IMG/VR virus record: IMGVR_UViG_3300027759_006101
Span: 62,001 to 126,000 of that record
DNA length: 64,000 bases
Direction: 5' to 3' (one strand)
Shown: positions 38,079-44,381 of the stretch, in pieces
Layout: each line of letters starts with the position of its first letter
Position numbering within the stretch: position 1 is the stretch's first letter
The notes under the pieces: generated by a model
The model's database searches: none
What the model was told of the DNA's origin: nothing
Seen by the model: only the letters and a program-made list of their open reading frames with translations
Made by a program: the position numbers and the translations under genes

Positions 38079-38875
38079 CTTATATGCGGCAATCTAATTG
38101 ACAAACAATTGGTGACTAAAGAATTCCATCCAGAGCCAGAACTAATATTTGAAGTGCTTCCTAATACCATTAAAAAAATGGGTTTGCCAGAATTGAGTCT
38201 TGATTTGGCAAGTCTGTCCAAATTTTGAACAAAGTGAGGATGCGTGTAGCTATATTGTTCGATGCCATCTATAACAATAAAATCTAAGTTTTTGAATTCA
38301 TCATTGATAATTTCAAATTGTTCTTTTTTATCAAAGTCAGTAATGATGCTTATAAGGTCTGACCACTCGTAATATTTAGCAGTAAGATTTTTTCTAATTG
38401 CAGCCTGGACTAAGACAGAAGCAATAAATGTTTTTCCACTGCCACTTTTTCCATCAAAAAGTATAGAATGCAGCTTTGAAACAAGATTGCCAGAGTGTCT
38501 AATTTTGGGACATTCGTTATCTGCAATTAACTGCAATTTCTTTTCGTAAAACTTAAGAATTGTAAAAACTCTTTCACTTACTTGTTCTTCAGCTCCCAAA
38601 TCTTTACCAGCAGAATCAGTTCTCGTGTTCCAATCATCTAAAGTTTTGCCTATGTATAGCAATGGAACATTAGATTTACGATAGACGCTTTTGTAAAATC
38701 TTTCTTTTTCACAAGAACATAATACAGCTTTATCATTCTCAGATTTTGTATATCCTGTGTAGTTACAAAGAACGCAGCCTTTGCCTTCACTCATACGACG
38801 TAGTTTGTCTTTTTCGTTTAAGTTTTTAGTTGTGCGTTCTAAACCAAGTATTTCATCAAATGACACATCAGACAC
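38075..38875 (-). CDS. dnaC: DnaC/DnaI-like helicase loader ATPase
   Basis: N-terminal C..C...G....CSC zinc motif, GKSGSGKTF, FIVIDGI. Adjacent to dnaB. Confidence 0.7.
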   Translation of the reverse strand: MSDVSFDEILGLERTTKNLNEKDKLRRMSEGKGCVLCNYTGYTKSENDKAVLCSCEKERFYKSVYRKSNVPLLYIGKTLDDWNTRTDSAGKDLGAEEQVSERVFTILKFYEKKLQLIADNECPKIRHSGNLVSKLHSILFDGKSGSGKTFIASVLVQAAIRKNLTAKYYEWSDLISIITDFDKKEQFEIINDEFKNLDFIVIDGIEQYSYTHPHFVQNLDRLAKSRLNSGKPIFLMVLGSTSNISSGSGWNSLVTNCLSIRLPHIR

Positions 38876-40479
38876 TATAAATCATCCTCATCATTATTAT
38901 ATCTTCTTAAATCAGAATTACCATTACTAGCATTTCTAGCTCTTTCAGAAGCCCAAGCTCTCAGCAATTCAATTTCTTCTTTCATAAGTTTGGATATAGG
39001 TACAGATTCTTTCAAGGACTGAAGTATATCATAGGTTGTAATGTCTCTTTTATTATCACTAAAAGCTTCATACAATGCACTTTCTATAGCAGCTTCGATT
39101 TCAGCTCCAGTGTATGATTCGGATACATCTGACAATTTATCTAAGTCATAATGTTTTGGATTTCTAGCTCTTTTTTGAAGATGTATTTCAAAAATTATTC
39201 TTCTCTCAGAAAACTTAGGCAAATCAACAAAAAATATTTCATCAAATCTGCCTTTTCTTAAGAGCTCTGGAGGAAGTGTTGTTACATCATTGGCAGTAGC
39301 AACAACAAATACAGGCTCTTTTCTGTCTTGCATCCAAGTAAGCCAAGAGCCTAAAACTCTACTAGTAGTTCCGCCATCAGTTGAAGAAGATGCTCTACTT
39401 CCTGACATACCTTTATCAATTTCATCGCACCACAATATGCAGGGAGCAACACTTTCGGCAACCTTAAACACCTGACGCATATTTTGTTCAGAGCTTCCTA
39501 CAAGCCCTGAAAAAACTTTGCCCATATCCAGTCTTAGCAATGGGAAATTCCAAAATGAAGAAATTCCCTTAGCAAATAGAGACTTTCCAGCTCCTTGAAT
39601 TCCTACAAGTAAAATGCCCTTAGGATTACTAGGTAAGCCATATTCGACTGCTTCTCTTGAAAAAGCATCTTTACGCTTACTTAACCATATTTTCAAGCCT
39701 TCAAGACCACCAATACTATCCATATTGATACTCTCATCAATCCAGTCTAGAAGACCTGATTTCTTGATGATGTCTCTTTTTTGTTGAGATATAGTTTCAG
39801 GCAATAGAGAGGAATGCTTAATCATACAATATGTGCAAACTTGTTCACACTCAGACAAAGTAAGACCACGAAATGAATTTATAATATTGTCCTTCTCTTC
39901 ATTACTATAAGTTGTTTTGAATTTAGCAGACAAATCAGCTCGTTTACTTGCTCTTTCAAGCAAATTATTGATTTTTGTATTTATCTCAAACTTGGTTGGC
40001 AATGGGAAATCAATTAATGGCACAATCTTTTCAAGGTCATTAGGTAATTCTAAGACTGACGAAAGAATAATGATTGCTTTATTTTGGACAGTGAATTCAT
40101 TCGTAAGATTTTTGAGATGTCTTATGATTTTAATTTCTACTTGTCCCTTATAATTTCCAGACCCAAAAAATTTATTAAAGTCTTTAAGAACTAAAATACA
40201 AAATTTGTTTTTAGGAACAATTAAGTTTTGAAACCAAGAAAGAACTTCAGATTGGTCTAATTGTTTTTCAACTTCTTTTGTAGGCAAAAATTCAGGAAAA
40301 GTAGATTCTAATCCTGAAACAACGTCCCACTTTATAAGATCCCACGAAGTATCAGCTTTAGAACACATTTGCTCTAAAGCTGACAATACTCTGTTTTCCT
40401 CTTGAGAAACGATATAAATAACGGTTCTTTTGGACCTTACAAGAAGTTCAATTTCTTCTAACGTACTTATGCTATCCAT
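38875..40479 (-). CDS. Ycf46-like AAA+ ATPase
   Basis: IGGLEGLK.WL, GILLVGIQGAGKS, PLLRLDMG, LVGSSE, WCDEIDK, ATAN...LPPELLRKGRFDE. Confidence 0.85.
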   Translation of the reverse strand: MDSISTLEEIELLVRSKRTVIYIVSQEENRVLSALEQMCSKADTSWDLIKWDVVSGLESTFPEFLPTKEVEKQLDQSEVLSWFQNLIVPKNKFCILVLKDFNKFFGSGNYKGQVEIKIIRHLKNLTNEFTVQNKAIIILSSVLELPNDLEKIVPLIDFPLPTKFEINTKINNLLERASKRADLSAKFKTTYSNEEKDNIINSFRGLTLSECEQVCTYCMIKHSSLLPETISQQKRDIIKKSGLLDWIDESINMDSIGGLEGLKIWLSKRKDAFSREAVEYGLPSNPKGILLVGIQGAGKSLFAKGISSFWNFPLLRLDMGKVFSGLVGSSEQNMRQVFKVAESVAPCILWCDEIDKGMSGSRASSSTDGGTTSRVLGSWLTWMQDRKEPVFVVATANDVTTLPPELLRKGRFDEIFFVDLPKFSERRIIFEIHLQKRARNPKHYDLDKLSDVSESYTGAEIEAAIESALYEAFSDNKRDITTYDILQSLKESVPISKLMKEEIELLRAWASERARNASNGNSDLRRYNNDEDDL

Positions 40480-41296
40480 TTAGGAACATTTCAATTTTAA
40501 ATCTTGGTTGTCCTGGGTAATCATCAGAGCGCCACCAAATTTCATTCTTAAATTTTGCTATATCTTGTTGAAATAAATTGCGCCAATCAAGAAGTTTGAA
40601 ATCTGAAGGGTAAGGTGAACGTGAAATAGATTTTTGGATAATGTCACTGAGTAGTTTTTTCTCTTGTGCGTTTCCCTTAGACATTTGAATAAATAAATTC
40701 TTCAATCCATTAGTTAAGTCTTGATCGTTAACTTTTTTGTATTTAGCATAATATGTGCTTGCTATTGGAATGCCATACTTGCTAAATAATTCCTTAGACT
40801 TACCCTCGGATGCTAATAGATGAACTTCTGGGAAAATATCTATAAGTGAAACAGAAGAATTTGACTTGATGACATCTTGAAAAAATCTATTTAAAAGATT
40901 AGGAAATTCAGCAAGTAAAAAATGGCCTGCTCTTTGCAAAACAATATTTTTATTTAAGAAACACCAATCAATAAATTTCTTGGTCCACTCATTCTTATCA
41001 AGATTATTTTCGGCCATAAAGTCCATAATGATATTGATTATTTTGTTGTCAGAAGTGTAAGTAATTTTGTATGCACCATCAAAAACTCTTTTATATTCTT
41101 GAGCAAAATAATCAGAGAAATGCTTAGGTGTCCAAAGTGCAACATCTTCTGGAATGTCTTTTGTTTTTACGGGTACAGTCTTTTTTCTTTGCCTTTTGTT
41201 AGCATTGAAAGGATTTGACAATTCACTTTGAAGAGGAACGTGTTGCATATAAATCGCCTTTACAAACTCAAATGTCGGATCGCTAACTGGTTTCAA
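40472..41296 (-). CDS. Hypothetical protein in the replication cluster
   Basis: 274-aa ORF overlapping both neighbours. Confidence 0.55.
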   Translation of the reverse strand: MKPVSDPTFEFVKAIYMQHVPLQSELSNPFNANKRQRKKTVPVKTKDIPEDVALWTPKHFSDYFAQEYKRVFDGAYKITYTSDNKIINIIMDFMAENNLDKNEWTKKFIDWCFLNKNIVLQRAGHFLLAEFPNLLNRFFQDVIKSNSSVSLIDIFPEVHLLASEGKSKELFSKYGIPIASTYYAKYKKVNDQDLTNGLKNLFIQMSKGNAQEKKLLSDIIQKSISRSPYPSDFKLLDWRNLFQQDIAKFKNEIWWRSDDYPGQPRFKIEMFLNG

Positions 41297-42018
41297 GGTA
41301 TACCCACCGTTTCATCTTCAAGCCCAAAATTTTGCATTTCTAAAATTTCTTCATGAGAAACTGATTTAATTTTTGCTATTCCATCTTCTTTGAAAGTCAA
41401 ATAGTTGACACTTGAAATCAATGAAAATTTGTCCGCAGAGTGTGATATCAATATAACTTGCAAATCCAATTCATCTATGTATGATTTCAAAAAAGCAAGC
41501 ATATTTGCCATTACAACATCTTTTGAAACAGCTGCTAAAGCTTCATCAAATATATAAATGCCTTTGTAGTCATTGTAAGTACCAAAAGCTATACGCAAAA
41601 GTACACTAATAATTTCCTGAAGACCACCACCATTAGAGCCCTTAATAGGTCTCATTACTCTTTTGCCATTGATGGTTTTTTCAATACAAGGCAAGATTGA
41701 AAATTGGCCAGAAAAGTCATCATCTTTAGAGTGAATTTCTTTTATCTCAAAAGAAAAGACATAATCATCACCATAAATTTTTTGGATAGCGCTTGTTAAT
41801 ATCTCTTCAATTGATGCAAGAGCTTTGAGACGAGTATCAGAAGCTCTTTGCCTTAAGAAAATTTGAGCTTTTTTTGTATTGCCCTTTTTATTCTCAAGAT
41901 TTTTTAAGTTATTTTCTTGCTCAGTTAATATGTTCTGTAAAGTATTACGTTCCGATTCCTGACCAATCAAATGTCTTTCAATCTTATTAATTTCTTTTTT
42001 TATTTCAGAAAATTCCAA
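41293..42018 (-). CDS. sbcC: SbcC/Rad50 C-terminal half (coiled coil, signature, Walker B)
   Basis: GSNGGG signature, IFDEA Walker B, ILISH switch. Confidence 0.8.
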   Translation of the reverse strand: MEFSEIKKEINKIERHLIGQESERNTLQNILTEQENNLKNLENKKGNTKKAQIFLRQRASDTRLKALASIEEILTSAIQKIYGDDYVFSFEIKEIHSKDDDFSGQFSILPCIEKTINGKRVMRPIKGSNGGGLQEIISVLLRIAFGTYNDYKGIYIFDEALAAVSKDVVMANMLAFLKSYIDELDLQVILISHSADKFSLISSVNYLTFKEDGIAKIKSVSHEEILEMQNFGLEDETVGIP

Positions 42019-42019
42019 G

Positions 42020-42274
42020 CTAATCTCCTTGCAATTCTTCTAATTTAACTTCTATTTCTGATAATTTAGATTCTAAGTCAGTTTGCTTTCTGACAATAAG
42101 AGACTTTAATTCTTTTGGCTGGCAGTTATAATCAGTTTCACATTTTTGCACCAATTTATCGTGCTCAATCTTATACTTATTCAATTGCTCAGTAAGCAAT
42201 TGAACTCTTCCCTCAGCAGCTGATTTTTTTGATTTAAGTGCTTCAATTTGATCTAAAATTTCTTGTGCCGTCAT
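42020..42274 (-). CDS. Small coiled-coil protein
   Basis: 84-aa heptad pattern, between sbcD and the sbcC C-half. Confidence 0.6.
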   Translation of the reverse strand: MTAQEILDQIEALKSKKSAAEGRVQLLTEQLNKYKIEHDKLVQKCETDYNCQPKELKSLIVRKQTDLESKLSEIEVKLEELQGD

Positions 42275-43257
42275 TGTGTATTTACCTTTCTGACTGCTTC
42301 AACTGCTATTTCTGCAATATCATCAGAAACATCAGCTTTTTTAGCCATATCCTTAAGAGCCACCAGTTTATCATCAAGAGAAGTAAATTGCCAAGAGTGA
42401 GTTCTCATACTAGCAACTTTGAACTTAAATTCTTGAGTGTCTGATTTTTGTTCTTTAGCGATTTGAATTTCTTCCAATTTAAATACCTGATCGTAAGGCA
42501 ATGCAGATTTGAGTTTATAATATTCTTCGGAAATAATATCCCCATCCAAAGAATATTCTAATAATAATATTTGAATGTCTTTTTTCAAATTATCTTTAGA
42601 GGCTGAATATCTACTAATTGCACCAGGATTTATGAAGCGTTTTCCGTCACTTCTAACTTGCTCCATTGCGTGATGTATGTGACCTGAAATAACTAAGTTA
42701 GTATTTGGATGTAATGGAGTATTTTCAAATAAGAAAGTAAATTCTTCAAATCTATCTAAAGCTGTTGATATAGAAGCATGACAAACCCATATGATAGCCG
42801 AGGATGATGTCAAATAGCCCTCTTTTATATCCTTATCTAAGCTTGCGGTGTAATGAGCAAAAGATATACCTAGAGATGGTTCATAGCCTGTTTTGATTAG
42901 ATATCCAGCGTTTATTAGAGTACCTAAAGTTGTTTTTTCTAAATTACAAGAACTATCTAAATCGTGATTGCCTACACACACATAAATTGGAAATGACCAA
43001 GAGATATTTCCATTAGGCACACCCTTGAGAATGTCTAATGTTTGATTGCGTAATAATGGACCTACTTCATATGATTCGAATAAATCCCCGAGCAAAACAA
43101 CAGCATCAAGTTTTCGTTCTTCAGCTAACAATAAACACTCAGTCAGCTTTTTTTTGATTGCTTCACAATAATTATCAAGTCTGTTTTTTGGCTGTCTATC
43201 TGATAAATGAATATCGCCAATAAACATAACTCTCTTTGTTTTTATTTCGTTTTTCAT
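42271..43257 (-). CDS. sbcD: SbcD/Mre11 metallophosphoesterase nuclease
   Basis: GDIHL, LGDLF, VGNHD, SGHIH, NPG. Start at 43257 forms an ATGA overlap. Confidence 0.88.
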   Translation of the reverse strand: MKNEIKTKRVMFIGDIHLSDRQPKNRLDNYCEAIKKKLTECLLLAEERKLDAVVLLGDLFESYEVGPLLRNQTLDILKGVPNGNISWSFPIYVCVGNHDLDSSCNLEKTTLGTLINAGYLIKTGYEPSLGISFAHYTASLDKDIKEGYLTSSSAIIWVCHASISTALDRFEEFTFLFENTPLHPNTNLVISGHIHHAMEQVRSDGKRFINPGAISRYSASKDNLKKDIQILLLEYSLDGDIISEEYYKLKSALPYDQVFKLEEIQIAKEQKSDTQEFKFKVASMRTHSWQFTSLDDKLVALKDMAKKADVSDDIAEIAVEAVRKVNTQ

Positions 43258-44381
43258 ACAGGTTTTCCACAAGTATCACATAAGTCAAAATTTTCAGAAA
43301 GATATTTTTTCAAACGCTCAATCTCTTTGTTGCTTTCTAAAATAATTTTGTTTTCATCAGACGTGTTTTTTTCAGTTTCGCTAATACTATCAGATACTTC
43401 TTGCAAACATTCTTTAAGTTCATTAGCTAGAGTGTATTCTAATTGAAGTTTCACAGATTCTGAAATTAAGTTACCAATGGTTCCTTCAGAAATTTCAAAA
43501 TATTTTTCGTATTGCTTTTTGGACTTGAAAAAATTATCTCTTGCTTTAGAAATTTCTTCAATCATTTTCAATCCATCTTCTATATCACTGAATGAGTCTT
43601 CCAAAAGTGGTATAGATTCTGAGAAAAAATTAATTAGTACGCTCGTATGATTTATTTCATTTTTGCAGTCTCTAACTCTATTGATTAAGGTTGCAATATC
43701 ATTGAAAAAAGATTTGGCATCGTGTATGTATGTTTCACAATCTTGATATTTATTTATCAAATCATTTAGTTTTTCTAAACTTTCTAGCTTTTCATCAAGT
43801 CCTTCAAAAGGTTCTAATTTCTTTTTTGTATTTTCGATTTCAGTATTTGCTCTTTTAATATCACCAGAAATTTTATTTATATCAGAACCTAAATTTGATG
43901 CAGCTTCTTCTAAATCGTGAATGCCTAATAATCTGGAAATTTCCTTTGGTAGAGCTTCGTCGCTTAGATTGATAAGGAAAAGTTTATCTTCTTGATTGGC
44001 AAAAGAAAGAGCGCCAGTTGAAGTTTTAGGAATGTGACCGAGAAAGTCTAATGCTTCTTGTGGAAATTGTTTAGAGAATCTTGAATGTTTTTGTAATTCT
44101 TTACCAGCATATTGGAATTCAAGCTCATTAGTATCGCCCTTGATTCTTTTGTAGTAATCACCATTTTTAAAATTTATAGTGATTTGAGCGTTCTTTTGTC
44201 CATCTCTTACATCTTGTTTTCTAAAGATATCAAGAAATGCTGTTGAGAGGGATCTGAATAATCCAGATTTGCCACTATCGGAGCTTCCTGTTATCAAATT
44301 CAAACCTGGATATAGTTTGATGTGAGTATCTTGGTGATTTTGAAAATCCTGTATGCGTATTGATTCTATATGCCTATTCAT
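43254..44381 (-). CDS. sbcC: SbcC/Rad50 N-terminal half ending in a zinc hook
   Basis: IQDFQNH, NLITGSSDSGKS Walker A, FANQ Q-loop, coiled coil, terminal CDTCGKPV. Confidence 0.82.
   Translation of the reverse strand: MNRHIESIRIQDFQNHQDTHIKLYPGLNLITGSSDSGKSGLFRSLSTAFLDIFRKQDVRDGQKNAQITINFKNGDYYKRIKGDTNELEFQYAGKELQKHSRFSKQFPQEALDFLGHIPKTSTGALSFANQEDKLFLINLSDEALPKEISRLLGIHDLEEAASNLGSDINKISGDIKRANTEIENTKKKLEPFEGLDEKLESLEKLNDLINKYQDCETYIHDAKSFFNDIATLINRVRDCKNEINHTSVLINFFSESIPLLEDSFSDIEDGLKMIEEISKARDNFFKSKKQYEKYFEISEGTIGNLISESVKLQLEYTLANELKECLQEVSDSISETEKNTSDENKIILESNKEIERLKKYLSENFDLCDTCGKPV

What the first reader, a model, noticed from the sequence alone, without database searches (positions are those of the whole stretch)
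41293..44381. SbcC/Rad50 split at the zinc hook, with SbcD and an 84-aa coiled coil between the halves
Seen: the N-half (Walker A, Q-loop, coil) stops four residues after CDTC. The C-half (coil, signature, Walker B, H-switch) is two genes downstream. Both use clean start/stop overlaps, so this is not a frameshift. Known: Rad50/SbcC is one chain folding back at the CxxC hook. Inference: a heteromeric SbcC whose returning coil is supplied by the C-half and perhaps by the small coil protein, i.e. a three-piece ATPase.
Basis: partly seen in the sequence, partly recalled or inferred. Interest (0 to 1): 0.6.

Follow-up and report, generated by a model that had tools for sequence, protein, structure and literature searches.

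The report
Three-piece SbcC/Rad50 split after the hook
This jumbo phage makes its only Rad50/SbcC DNA-repair ATPase from three separate genes (a front half ending at the zinc hook, an 84-residue helical protein, and a back half), and the same arrangement is conserved in many phages and in about one in seven sampled Bacillota-type genomes, although I found no paper describing it.

Summary
Four translationally coupled genes lie on the minus strand:
- N-half, 375 aa: Walker A, Q-loop, about 205 helical residues, CDTC, then four residues.
- SbcD, 328 aa.
- An 84-aa helix-loop-helix protein.
- C-half, 241 aa: about 48 residues of coil, then signature, Walker B and H-loop.

The split is not a local accident.
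- The four-gene order persists in metagenomic phages down to about 25% C-half identity.
- Standalone C-halves form 599 clusters, and nearly all of the best 150 are 195-285 aa.
- In every lineage I could read, the N-half ends 2-29 residues after a CxxC.
- A homologous 77-96-aa protein sits directly before the C-half in all but one short contig.
- In Bacillota genomes the order is sbcD, N-half, small, C-half, next to recA or herA-nurA. 55 of 401 sampled genomes carry it.
- One genome fuses SbcD, N-lobe and C-lobe with no coil, which ties the halves together.

The structure of the arm is not settled. The small protein plus the C-half coil total about 125-158 residues in all lineages. The N-half coil varies from 144 to 341 residues (207 here). 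So a simple three-piece return strand does not balance, except roughly in one Microcystis phage. The complex prediction gave no verdict. I rate it a new variant of a known kind.

The parts
43254..44381 (-). SbcC/Rad50 N-half (375 aa): ABC N-lobe (about residues 1-160), helical arm (helices 157-192, 195-264, 270-299, 301-364), CxxC hook, four-residue tail
   Evidence: Pfam AAA_23 8e-10. PHROG 16465 'exonuclease' 1.1e-28. NCBIfam Rad50 5e-17 over profile positions 2-359 of 878. AF2 model. N-lobe matches P. furiosus Rad50 at Z 12.1, rmsd 2.9 over 115 residues.
44265..44288 (-). Walker A / P-loop GSSDSGKS (residues 32-39)
   Evidence: Translation. G32, S34, D35, G37, K38, S39 invariant in 44 relatives.
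43269..43280 (-). CxxC zinc-hook motif CDTC (residues 368-371), four residues before the stop
   Evidence: F365, C368, C371, G372 invariant. Every other N-half read ends 2-29 residues after a CxxC.
42271..43257 (-). SbcD/Mre11-type nuclease (328 aa) with all metallophosphoesterase motifs (GDIH, GDLF, GNHD, GHIH)
   Evidence: Pfam Metallophos 5.7e-9, PHROG 100 'SbcD-like'. Sequence. It is the only Metallophos hit in the 358-kb genome.
42020..42274 (-). Small third subunit (84 aa): helix 3-49, loop with invariant C45, C51, P53, helix 53-82
   Evidence: AF2 pLDDT 85. 52 relatives of 84-96 aa at 56-98% identity. Alignment A2. hhalign to the Bacillota small proteins: probability 87.9%, E 3.2e-6. 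No Pfam family above cut-off and no named PHROG.
41293..42018 (-). SbcC/Rad50 C-half (241 aa): about 48 residues of free coil, then the ABC C-lobe with signature (GSNGGG), Walker B (IYIFDE) and H-loop (LISHS)
   Evidence: PHROG 15167 'ATPase' 5.9e-25, a profile only 211 positions long. A family profile that includes this protein hits the P. furiosus Rad50 C-lobe chain 3qkr_B at E 2.6e-15. Invariant N129, G130-132, D158, E159, Q187.
40472..41296 (-). Conserved 274-aa protein of unknown function, coupled to the C-half by a TTGA overlap. Possible further partner; membership not shown.
   Evidence: Follows the C-half (271-287 aa) in L002-L005, L016, L019 and two contigs listed without DNA. No Pfam, PHROG or PADLOC hit.

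Best explanation
The locus encodes the phage's only Mre11-Rad50 (SbcCD) type DNA-end and hairpin nuclease. Its Rad50/SbcC ATPase is assembled from three polypeptides instead of one.

The N-half carries the Walker A/Q-loop lobe, the outgoing helical arm and the CxxC hook. The C-half carries about 48 residues of coil and the lobe with signature, Walker B and H-loop. The two lobes must dock non-covalently to form one ABC head, because neither is a complete ATPase on its own. This is how the separately expressed N and C fragments of P. furiosus Rad50 behave in crystal structures.

The 84-residue helix-loop-helix protein is a conserved third subunit. It most likely packs on the hook-proximal part of the N-half arm, taking the place of the returning strand that is cut off right after the hook. 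SbcD is the nuclease, and the four genes are translationally coupled.

The arrangement is an old, stably inherited architecture shared by many phages and by Bacillota chromosomes.

Shown: gene structure, motifs, conservation, synteny, family size, and a Rosetta-stone fusion of the two lobes. Inferred: lobe docking, the position of the small subunit, and the nuclease function.
For: Gene structure and motifs.

N-lobe is Rad50-like. C-lobe is Rad50-like: E 2.6e-15 to 3qkr_B; Bacillota C-half against archaeal Rad50 profile positions 658-868 of 872.

This is the only AAA_23/SMC_N hit and the only Metallophos hit in the 358-kb genome, which is 89% complete.

The same four-gene order occurs in phage contigs at 54%, 39%, 38%, 28%, 26%, 26% and 25% C-half identity and apparently in Microcystis phage Mvi-JY20. 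Bacillus phages 0305phi8-36, phBC6A51 and vB_BboS-125 also have an N-half ending at CxxC, a small protein, and a C-half.

Standalone C-halves: 599 clusters at E<=1e-3. Nearly all of the best 150 are 195-285 aa; the rest are shorter fragments, and none is full length.

All 29 Bacillota loci have sbcD, N-half, small and C-half in a row, with varying frames and gaps. Their context is recA...rny or NurA-HerA...uppP.

55 of 401 sampled genomes carry a C-half. Almost all open frames are 213-282 aa; the exceptions are the 702-aa fusion and two truncated matches. G001-G003 show no other SbcC-sized AAA_23 protein.

The G093 single-chain SbcD + N-lobe + C-lobe fusion links the halves.

Small-protein homology across clades. 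Two divergent small proteins both map to positions 358-435 of the ASRP profile, just after the stretch matched by the N-half.
Against: There is no direct evidence of binding: the three-chain complex prediction scored 0.07, which is no verdict.

The coil lengths do not balance. The ascending arm is 207 residues here, against 84 + 47 for the small protein plus the C-half coil. In relatives the return sum stays at 124-158 while the arm runs from 144 to 341. Part of the N-half arm must therefore fold on itself, stay unpaired, or bind something else.

The similarity of the small protein to any post-hook Rad50 segment is weak (E 0.066 and 3e-5 to one profile) and could be coiled-coil noise. It shows no similarity to E. 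coli SbcC.

The window C-half alone gives no significant PDB or Pfam hit; only the family profile does.
Confidence: 0.8

Rival explanations
1. The N-half and C-half do form a two-chain Rad50. The small protein is not part of the arm. It is an accessory factor (adaptor, regulator or clamp) that docks on the coil base, the head or SbcD, much as the helix-loop-helix Rad50-binding domain of Mre11 or a kleisin-like partner does. The surplus N-half coil folds back on itself.
For: AF2 gives a helix-loop-helix of 47 + 30 residues. The length of the small protein is constant (77-96) while the N-half arm varies 144-341, so it does not scale with the arm. Bacillota versions end in a conserved LIPW-D-L-like motif that looks like a docking peptide. 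AF2 predicts breaks in the N-half arm at 193-194, 265-269 and 300, at conserved Pro/Gly positions.
Against: In Bacillota its gene always lies between the N-half and the C-half, colinear with where the post-hook coil would be. SbcD keeps its own C-terminal helical region. The small protein maps weakly but reproducibly to the post-apex part of an SMC-related profile.
Confidence: 0.3
2. In this clade the hook zinc site is completed in trans by the small protein. N-half C368/C371 and small-protein C45/C51 together bind one zinc, tying the loop of the small protein to the end of the arm. This would replace, or add to, the usual zinc bridge between two Rad50 molecules.
For: C45 and C51 are invariant in 32 relatives at 56-98% identity and lie at the inter-helix loop. 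The L015 lineage (38% C-half identity) has the same C-x5-C together with a bare two-Cys tail. L016 and L019 keep one Cys or an H-x-C there.
Against: Small proteins of Bacillus phages, the Microcystis phage and all 18 tabulated Bacillota loci have no Cys, so this cannot be the general mechanism. N-half tails in Bacillota resemble canonical hooks, CP[VLI]C followed by L-x-x-E, compared with the E. coli hook read. No structural test was possible.
Confidence: 0.12
3. The pieces are joined into one chain after or during translation, by recoding, ribosomal bypass or protein trans-splicing, so the split exists only at the gene level.
For: None found. Considered because phages do use bypassing and split inteins.
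Against: A complete SbcD gene lies between the N-half and the rest. In 18 tabulated Bacillota loci the three ORFs occupy all frame combinations, with N-half/small spacing from -74 to +147 nt. The N-half tail is 2-29 residues and the small protein starts with Met, which leaves no room for intein halves. The C-half has its own Shine-Dalgarno sequence.
Confidence: 0.02
4. The locus is a decaying SbcC, or an SMC-like anti-phage defence or counter-defence module, rather than a repair nuclease.
For: The N-half has weak PADLOC hits to LmuB, PtuA and GajA N-lobes (best E 4.9e-10).
Against: Those hits are generic ABC N-lobe similarity and are weaker than the Rad50 and PHROG exonuclease hits. The other four proteins have no PADLOC hit. 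All catalytic motifs are invariant. The context is a replication module with AAA+, DnaC-like, DnaB and primase genes. In bacteria the operon sits by recA or herA-nurA.
Confidence: 0.03

Closest known systems
Canonical Rad50/SbcC with Mre11/SbcD (E. coli SbcCD, T4 gp46/gp47, archaeal Mre11-Rad50)
   Same: ABC head built from an N-lobe (Walker A, Q-loop) and a C-lobe (signature, Walker B, H-loop). Long helical arm. CxxC hook whose flanks resemble canonical hooks. Adjacent metallophosphoesterase nuclease. Genomic linkage to recA or herA-nurA in bacteria.
   Different: Encoded as three polypeptides, cut 2-29 residues after the hook. A separate 77-96-aa subunit is present. The outgoing arm (144-341 residues) is much longer than everything available to return (124-158). 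In the jumbo-phage clade sbcD sits inside the split.
Engineered two-chain Rad50 catalytic domain of P. furiosus (PDB 1F2T/1F2U, 1II8, 3QKR, chains A + B)
   Same: Separate N and C fragments, each with a stub of coil, form one ATPase head. The family profile aligns to chain B of 3QKR at E 2.6e-15 and the N-half to chain A-type fragments. That these fragments reconstitute an active ATPase is from my own knowledge of Hopfner et al. 2000, not read here.
   Different: Those are laboratory truncations lacking arm and hook. Here the split is natural, keeps arm and hook, and adds a third subunit.
Bacillus phage 0305phi8-36 gp8/gp7/gp5, phBC6A51 BC1852/BC1854/BC1855, vB_BboS-125 gp32/gp34/gp35 (PHROGs 16465, 18563, 15167)
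   Same: Same three pieces. The N-half ends at CPTC/CPLC plus 9-17 residues, the small protein is 77-92 aa, and the C-half is 211-236 aa.
   Different: Deposited as unrelated 'exonuclease', 'hypothetical' and 'chromosome segregation ATPase' entries. Yoshida et al. 2011 (PMC3175470) noted only that one P-loop segment 'was not observed' in the 0305phi8-36 fusion. SbcD is fused to the N-half (0305phi8-36) or lies after the C-half (phBC6A51), not between the pieces.
Genes-in-pieces made by homing endonucleases in phages (for example split nrd genes of T4-like phages)
   Same: An essential enzyme is split into separately translated, still functional parts. An AP2/HNH-type gene sits exactly at the split in vB_BboS-125 (gp33), with a similar 169-aa gene in contig L011.
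   Different: Here the split is ancient and also chromosomal, and most members have no endonuclease gene at the junction. This parallel is from my own knowledge and was not tested.

Membership tests
Rad50/SbcC ATPase of the Mre11-Rad50 (SbcCD) nuclease | ABC N-lobe with Walker A and Q-loop | tested here: met
   GSSDSGKS and Q130 are invariant. Rad50 NCBIfam 5e-17. PDB Rad50 N-lobes E 3e-8. Structural Z 12.1.
Rad50/SbcC ATPase of the Mre11-Rad50 (SbcCD) nuclease | ABC C-lobe with signature motif, Walker B, D-loop and H-loop | tested here: met
   GSNGGG, IYIFDE and LISHS. The family profile hits the Rad50 C-lobe 3qkr_B at E 2.6e-15. The window protein alone is below threshold.
Rad50/SbcC ATPase of the Mre11-Rad50 (SbcCD) nuclease | Both lobes on one polypeptide that folds back at the hook | tested here: not met
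   Three ORFs with a complete sbcD between them. No sign of recoding.
Rad50/SbcC ATPase of the Mre11-Rad50 (SbcCD) nuclease | CxxC zinc hook at the apex of an antiparallel coiled coil | tested here: inconclusive
   CxxC is present and invariant and follows about 205 helical residues. The apex position, zinc binding and the pairing partner could not be tested; the complex prediction gave no verdict.
Rad50/SbcC ATPase of the Mre11-Rad50 (SbcCD) nuclease | Partner Mre11/SbcD metallophosphoesterase encoded alongside | tested here: met
   Metallophos 5.7e-9 with all motifs present. Adjacent in every relative.
Rad50/SbcC ATPase of the Mre11-Rad50 (SbcCD) nuclease | ATP-dependent nuclease activity on DNA ends and hairpins | not testable with these tools
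   Needs biochemistry.
Three-piece split SbcC family (defined here; PHROGs 16465 / 18563-like / 15167) | N-half ends within about 30 residues after the CxxC | tested here: met
   Four residues here. 2-29 in every other N-half read.
Three-piece split SbcC family (defined here; PHROGs 16465 / 18563-like / 15167) | 77-96-aa helix-loop(Pro)-helix protein encoded directly upstream of the C-half | tested here: met
   84 aa, with the loop Pro in register with the Bacillota family.
Three-piece split SbcC family (defined here; PHROGs 16465 / 18563-like / 15167) | Standalone C-half of about 205-260 aa with about 40-55 residues of free coil | tested here: met
   241 aa with the C-lobe starting near residue 48.
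Split-intein or recoded (bypassed, frameshifted) gene | Intein halves at the break, or a conserved frame relation and recoding signal | tested here: not met
   The tails are too short for an intein. Frames and spacers vary between loci.
SMC-like defence ATPases (Lamassu LmuB, Septu PtuA, Gabija GajA) | Full-length match to the defence ATPase together with its effector partner | tested here: not met
   Only weak N-lobe-level hits (best 37 bits). The other genes have no PADLOC hit.

The most novel reading that the evidence does not exclude
The zinc hook of this clade is a hetero-junction. The two cysteines at the C-terminus of the N-half and the two invariant cysteines in the loop of the 84-residue subunit share one zinc. 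The metal would then staple separate polypeptides of one arm together rather than, or in addition to, bridging two Rad50 complexes. More broadly, the Rad50 arm would be a multi-subunit assembly with a previously unrecognised obligatory small subunit.
Probability: 0.12. Interest if true: 0.8.

Novelty: new variant of a known kind. Interest (0 to 1): 0.62.

Why it matters
Rad50/SbcC is the textbook case of an SMC-like ATPase whose single chain runs out along a coiled coil, turns at a zinc hook and returns to complete its own ATP-binding head. How arm length, arm continuity and the hook pass signals to the head is still debated.

A natural, conserved version cut just after the hook has three useful properties. 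It has a dedicated small subunit. Its outgoing arm is up to 2.7 times longer than everything available to pair with it. It also allows the three parts to be expressed, mutated and titrated separately.

It appears to be the only Rad50 in the three Bacillota genomes I checked. It was found in 55 of 401 sampled genomes of that phylum, beside recA or herA-nurA. It is also the only SbcCD found in this jumbo phage. So it is a working solution, not a curiosity.

Its pieces are annotated as unrelated 'exonuclease', 'hypothetical' and 'chromosome segregation ATPase' proteins. Genome surveys will therefore miscount SbcC presence and miss the third subunit.

Tried and rejected
1. Complex prediction of N-half + C-half + small protein, with my own alignments and the small protein as partner: score 0.07 and 0.06, no verdict, controls not run. 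This is neither support nor evidence against binding.

2. The window C-half clade profile (A3) against the PDB, and hhalign of A3, A1 and A7 against E. coli SbcC: nothing useful. Only the broad family profile A4 reached the Rad50 C-lobes.

3. Megablast of the locus against phage records: no match.

4. Reading the arm topology from the AF2 N-half model. Coordinates are not exposed, and Foldseek and VIA hits cover only residues 1-152. Whether the arm is extended or folded back stays open.

5. A cis 'zinc knuckle' in N-half tails that carry extra Cys/His. I dropped this as a general idea, because the Bacillota tails look like ordinary hooks with the first turn of a returning helix.

6. ESM Atlas look-alikes for the small protein and for the 274-aa neighbour: only unnamed viral clusters.

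7. Literature. Seven searches and several papers gave no description of a split SbcC/Rad50. The ABC-ATPase classification by Krishnan et al. 2020 (NAR 48:10045) is not held, so I cannot exclude that it mentions this family.

8. Read mapping and expression were not attempted. No alternative genetic code was used.


Full report
**What the window is.** The window is bases 62001-126000 of a 358-kb IMG/VR virus record, estimated 89% complete, with GC about 32%. It is a jumbo phage.

**What the locus holds.** The finding lies in a long minus-strand operon. In order:
- a 201-aa ORF;
- the N-half, 44381..43254, 375 aa;
- SbcD, 43257..42271, 328 aa;
- a small protein, 42274..42020, 84 aa;
- the C-half, 42018..41293, 241 aa;
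- a 274-aa protein of unknown function;
- an AAA+ ATPase, a protein whose relatives give weak or faint IstB_IS21 (DnaC-like) Pfam hits, and a DnaB-like helicase.

In relatives a primase-type zinc-ribbon protein follows.

**Observation check.**
- The N-half has GSSDSGKS (Walker A) and an invariant Gln in ANQE (Q-loop). It ends CDTCGKPV-stop.
- The C-half has GSNGGGLQ (signature), IYIFDE (Walker B) and LISHS (H-loop).
- Three junctions are four-base overlaps (ATGA, ATGA, TTGA). The small/C-half junction is TAG-C-TTG, with AAGGAG six bases upstream.
- Relatives have ATG where the window has TTG, which supports that start.
- SbcD has all the metallophosphoesterase motifs (Pfam 5.7e-9).

**Identity of the halves.**
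- The N-half matches AAA_23, PHROG 16465 ('exonuclease', 1.1e-28) and archaeal Rad50 models over profile positions 2-359 of 878.
- Its AF2 model (pLDDT 77) has an N-lobe that superposes on P. furiosus Rad50 at Z 12.1, rmsd 2.9 Å over 115 residues.
- The lobe is followed by helices 157-192, 195-264, 270-299 and 301-364, then a short hairpin holding the CxxC.
- The C-half matches PHROG 15167 ('ATPase', 5.9e-25). That profile is only 211 positions long, so it was already a family of short proteins.
- Alone, the C-half gives no significant Pfam or PDB hit.
- A profile of 102 diverse family members, headed by the window protein, hits the C-terminal chain of the two-chain P. furiosus Rad50 head (3qkr_B) at E 2.6e-15. 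Other Rad50 and SMC C-lobes follow.
- 34 of the 102 members reach SMC_N on their own.
- The genome has no other AAA_23/SMC_N hit and no other Metallophos hit. This appears to be its only SbcCD. Iyer et al. 2021 call that complex practically universal in jumbo phages (PMC7824862).

**The split is conserved, not local.**
- Word-index searches found 67, 52 and 90 relatives of the C-half, small protein and N-half. Lengths were nearly fixed at 232-244, 84-85 and 375-381 aa, apart from a few shorter, probably partial hits and one 96-aa small protein. Identities went down to about 45-56%.
- Contigs carrying C-halves at 65%, 59% and 54% identity have the same order, about 375-381 / 328 / 84 / 236-237 aa.
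- An exhaustive HMMER search with the C-half found 599 clusters of 50%-identity representatives at E<=1e-3. Nearly all of the best 150 are 195-285 aa; the rest are shorter fragments, and none is full length.
- Sampling those at 25-39% identity again gave N-half / SbcD / small (85-94 aa) / C-half, usually followed by the same replication genes.
- Annotated phages carry the pieces under unrelated names:
  - 0305phi8-36: gp8 (SbcD fused to the N-half), gp7 (92 aa) and gp5;
  - phBC6A51: BC1852, BC1854 (77 aa) and BC1855;
  - vB_BboS-125: gp32, gp34 and gp35;
  - Microcystis phage Mvi-JY20: four unannotated genes in what looks like the window's order.

**Where the cut falls.** In every lineage I could read, the N-half ends 2-29 residues after a CxxC. 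Those were the window clade, L005, L011, L014, L015, L016, L019, four named phages and 29 Bacillota loci. The Bacillota tails are typically CP[VLI]C followed by L-x-x-E-x-V-E-like residues. They resemble the E. coli hook CPLCGSTSHP read. So the cut falls at the very start of the returning helix.

**The family is also cellular.**
- A scan of species-representative genomes with one temperate-phage-type C-half returned 29 loci. All but one are in Bacillota, and one lies on a Paenibacillus plasmid.
- Every locus that extends far enough shows sbcD, N-half (429-534 aa), small (77-96 aa) and C-half (216-249 aa) in a row.
- All three frames are used, and spacers run from overlaps to +147 nt. That excludes a conserved recoding signal.
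- The flanks are chromosomal:
  - in Peptoniphilus indolicus the order is pgsA, cinA, recA, then the four genes, then rny;
  - the RNase Y-like 520-522-aa ORF also follows in four other genomes;
  - in a Syntrophomonadaceae MAG the order is NurA, HerA, then the four genes, then uppP.
- In an even sample of 401 genomes of that phylum, 55 carry a strong C-half match. Almost all open frames are 213-282 aa; the exceptions are one 702-aa frame and two truncated matches.
- In three such genomes the other AAA_23 proteins have lengths suggesting SMC, RecN and RecF (my inference from length only). No SbcC-sized protein appears.

**A fusion that ties the halves together.** The 702-aa open frame is a single chain: SbcD (6-324), N-lobe (334-496) and C-lobe (520-682). 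It has no coil, no hook and no small-protein segment. It links the two halves and SbcD functionally. It also marks the lobe boundaries: the N-lobe ends near residue 160 of the window N-half, and the C-lobe starts near residue 48 of the C-half.

**The small protein.**
- AF2 gives helix 3-49, a three-residue loop, and helix 53-82 (pLDDT 85).
- The N-terminal 23 residues and the loop are its most conserved parts. C45, C51 and P53 are invariant in the clade.
- Bacillota small proteins share the plan: a roughly 45-residue helix, G-V-x-P-E-x-L, a roughly 25-residue helix, then a conserved L-I-P-W motif.
- Profile-profile comparison of the two sets gives probability 87.9%, E 3.2e-6, with the loop proline in register.
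- No Pfam family passes its cut-off. The Bacillus versions form PHROG 18563, 'unknown function'.
- The window protein and the Peptoniphilus one both map weakly to positions 358-435 of the archaeal SMC-related ASRP model. That is directly after the part matched by the N-halves. It fits descent from the post-hook segment but is not proof.
- One 4-kb contig (L012) has an unrelated 89-aa ORF before its C-half.

**Coil bookkeeping.** I used the fusion boundaries. 'Arm' is the N-half coil up to the CxxC. 'Return' is the small protein plus the free C-half coil.

| Lineage | Arm | Return |
|---|---|---|
| Mvi-JY20 | 144 | 130 |
| L019 | 188 | 128 |
| L016 | 197 | 140 |
| window | 207 | 131 |
| L026 | 235 | 124 |
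| 0305phi8-36 | 245 | 139 |
| L036 | 247 | 145 |
| L021 (Halalkalibacterium) | 294 | 132 |
| vB_BboS-125 | 295 | 126 |
| L039 | 340 | 158 |
| phBC6A51 | 340 | 125 |
| L023 | 341 | 126 |

The return side is nearly constant and the arm is not. In the window about 75 arm residues have no assigned partner. AF2 places breaks at conserved Pro/Gly positions (193-194, 265-269, 300). This fits a fold-back insertion in the arm, but I could not see the model's tertiary arrangement.

**Most likely mechanism.**
- The two lobes dock to form one ABC head. That step is inferred from three things: neither half is a complete ATPase, the G093 fusion, and the laboratory two-chain Rad50 heads.
- The C-half coil pairs with the first part of the arm.
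- The small subunit binds the hook-proximal arm.
- The variable middle of the arm folds on itself.
- The CxxC dimerises two complexes through zinc, as in Rad50.
- SbcD supplies the nuclease.

The complex prediction returned no verdict, so binding remains untested.

**Rivals.** The small protein may be an accessory adaptor rather than arm material. In this clade it may instead complete the zinc site through its invariant Cys pair. That idea is attractive here, but the small proteins of most other lineages lack Cys. Recoding, trans-splicing, gene decay and a defence role are each contradicted.

**Novelty.**
- I found no paper describing a naturally split Rad50/SbcC.
- The closest remark is in Yoshida et al. 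2011. They noted that one P-loop segment 'was not observed' in the 0305phi8-36 Mre11-Rad50 fusion (PMC3175470). That segment is gp5, three genes downstream.
- The Krishnan et al. 2020 classification of ABC ATPases could not be read.
- No NCBIfam model passes its cut-off for any piece.
- I rate this a new variant of a known kind. The window is one ordinary member of a large but apparently unrecognised family.

Noticed in passing
L052:3152-5254 (minus strand; genome G093, contig C6): A 700-aa single chain fuses SbcD, the split-family N-lobe and the C-lobe, with only about 25 linker residues. It has no coiled coil, no CxxC and no small-protein segment: a natural 'head-only' Mre11-Rad50.
   Followed up: partly
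window 42122-42142 (minus strand; small-protein residues 45-51): Two cysteines spaced C-x5-C at the inter-helix loop are invariant in 32 relatives and recur in lineage L015. Other lineages have one or none. They may be zinc ligands working with the N-half CxxC.
   Followed up: partly
L009:5410-5982 (vB_BboS-125 gp33) and L011:3958-4467: An AP2-domain gene (gp33), and a similar 169-aa gene in L011, sit exactly at the split between the N-half and the small protein. 0305phi8-36 has an HNH endonuclease (gp9) just upstream of gp8. They look like homing-endonuclease genes and hint at how the gene was, or keeps being, cut.
   Followed up: no
window 40472-41296 (minus strand): A 274-aa protein with no detectable family is translationally coupled to the C-half and conserved (271-287 aa) at that position in distant phage relatives, ahead of the AAA+ / DnaC-like / DnaB / primase genes. 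It may be a further partner of the nuclease or a helicase-loading factor.
   Followed up: partly
L008:6468-6845 (BC1856) and L009:6882-7238 (gp36): In the Bacillus phages the gene after the C-half encodes a 118-125-aa protein that begins M-C-x-K-C (PHROG 23683, unknown function). This is a second CxxC next to a split hook.
   Followed up: no
L023:7276-11641 and L028:6922-11261: In a Brevibacillus MAG and in Ammoniphilus, a second SbcD-like gene (418-436 aa) and a 1012-1039-aa ATPase without any CxxC lie 300-650 bp downstream of the split operon.
   Followed up: no
L005:548-1693 (N-half, 381 aa) and protein P0203: One sub-clade of the window's family extends the hook tail to C-x-x-C-G-R-F-C-T-C, adding two more cysteines after the CxxC.
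   Followed up: no
window 38875-40479 (minus strand): A 534-aa AAA+ ATPase (PHROG 8638, 2.7e-142, unknown function) is conserved immediately downstream of the nuclease genes in all the jumbo-type relatives.
   Followed up: no
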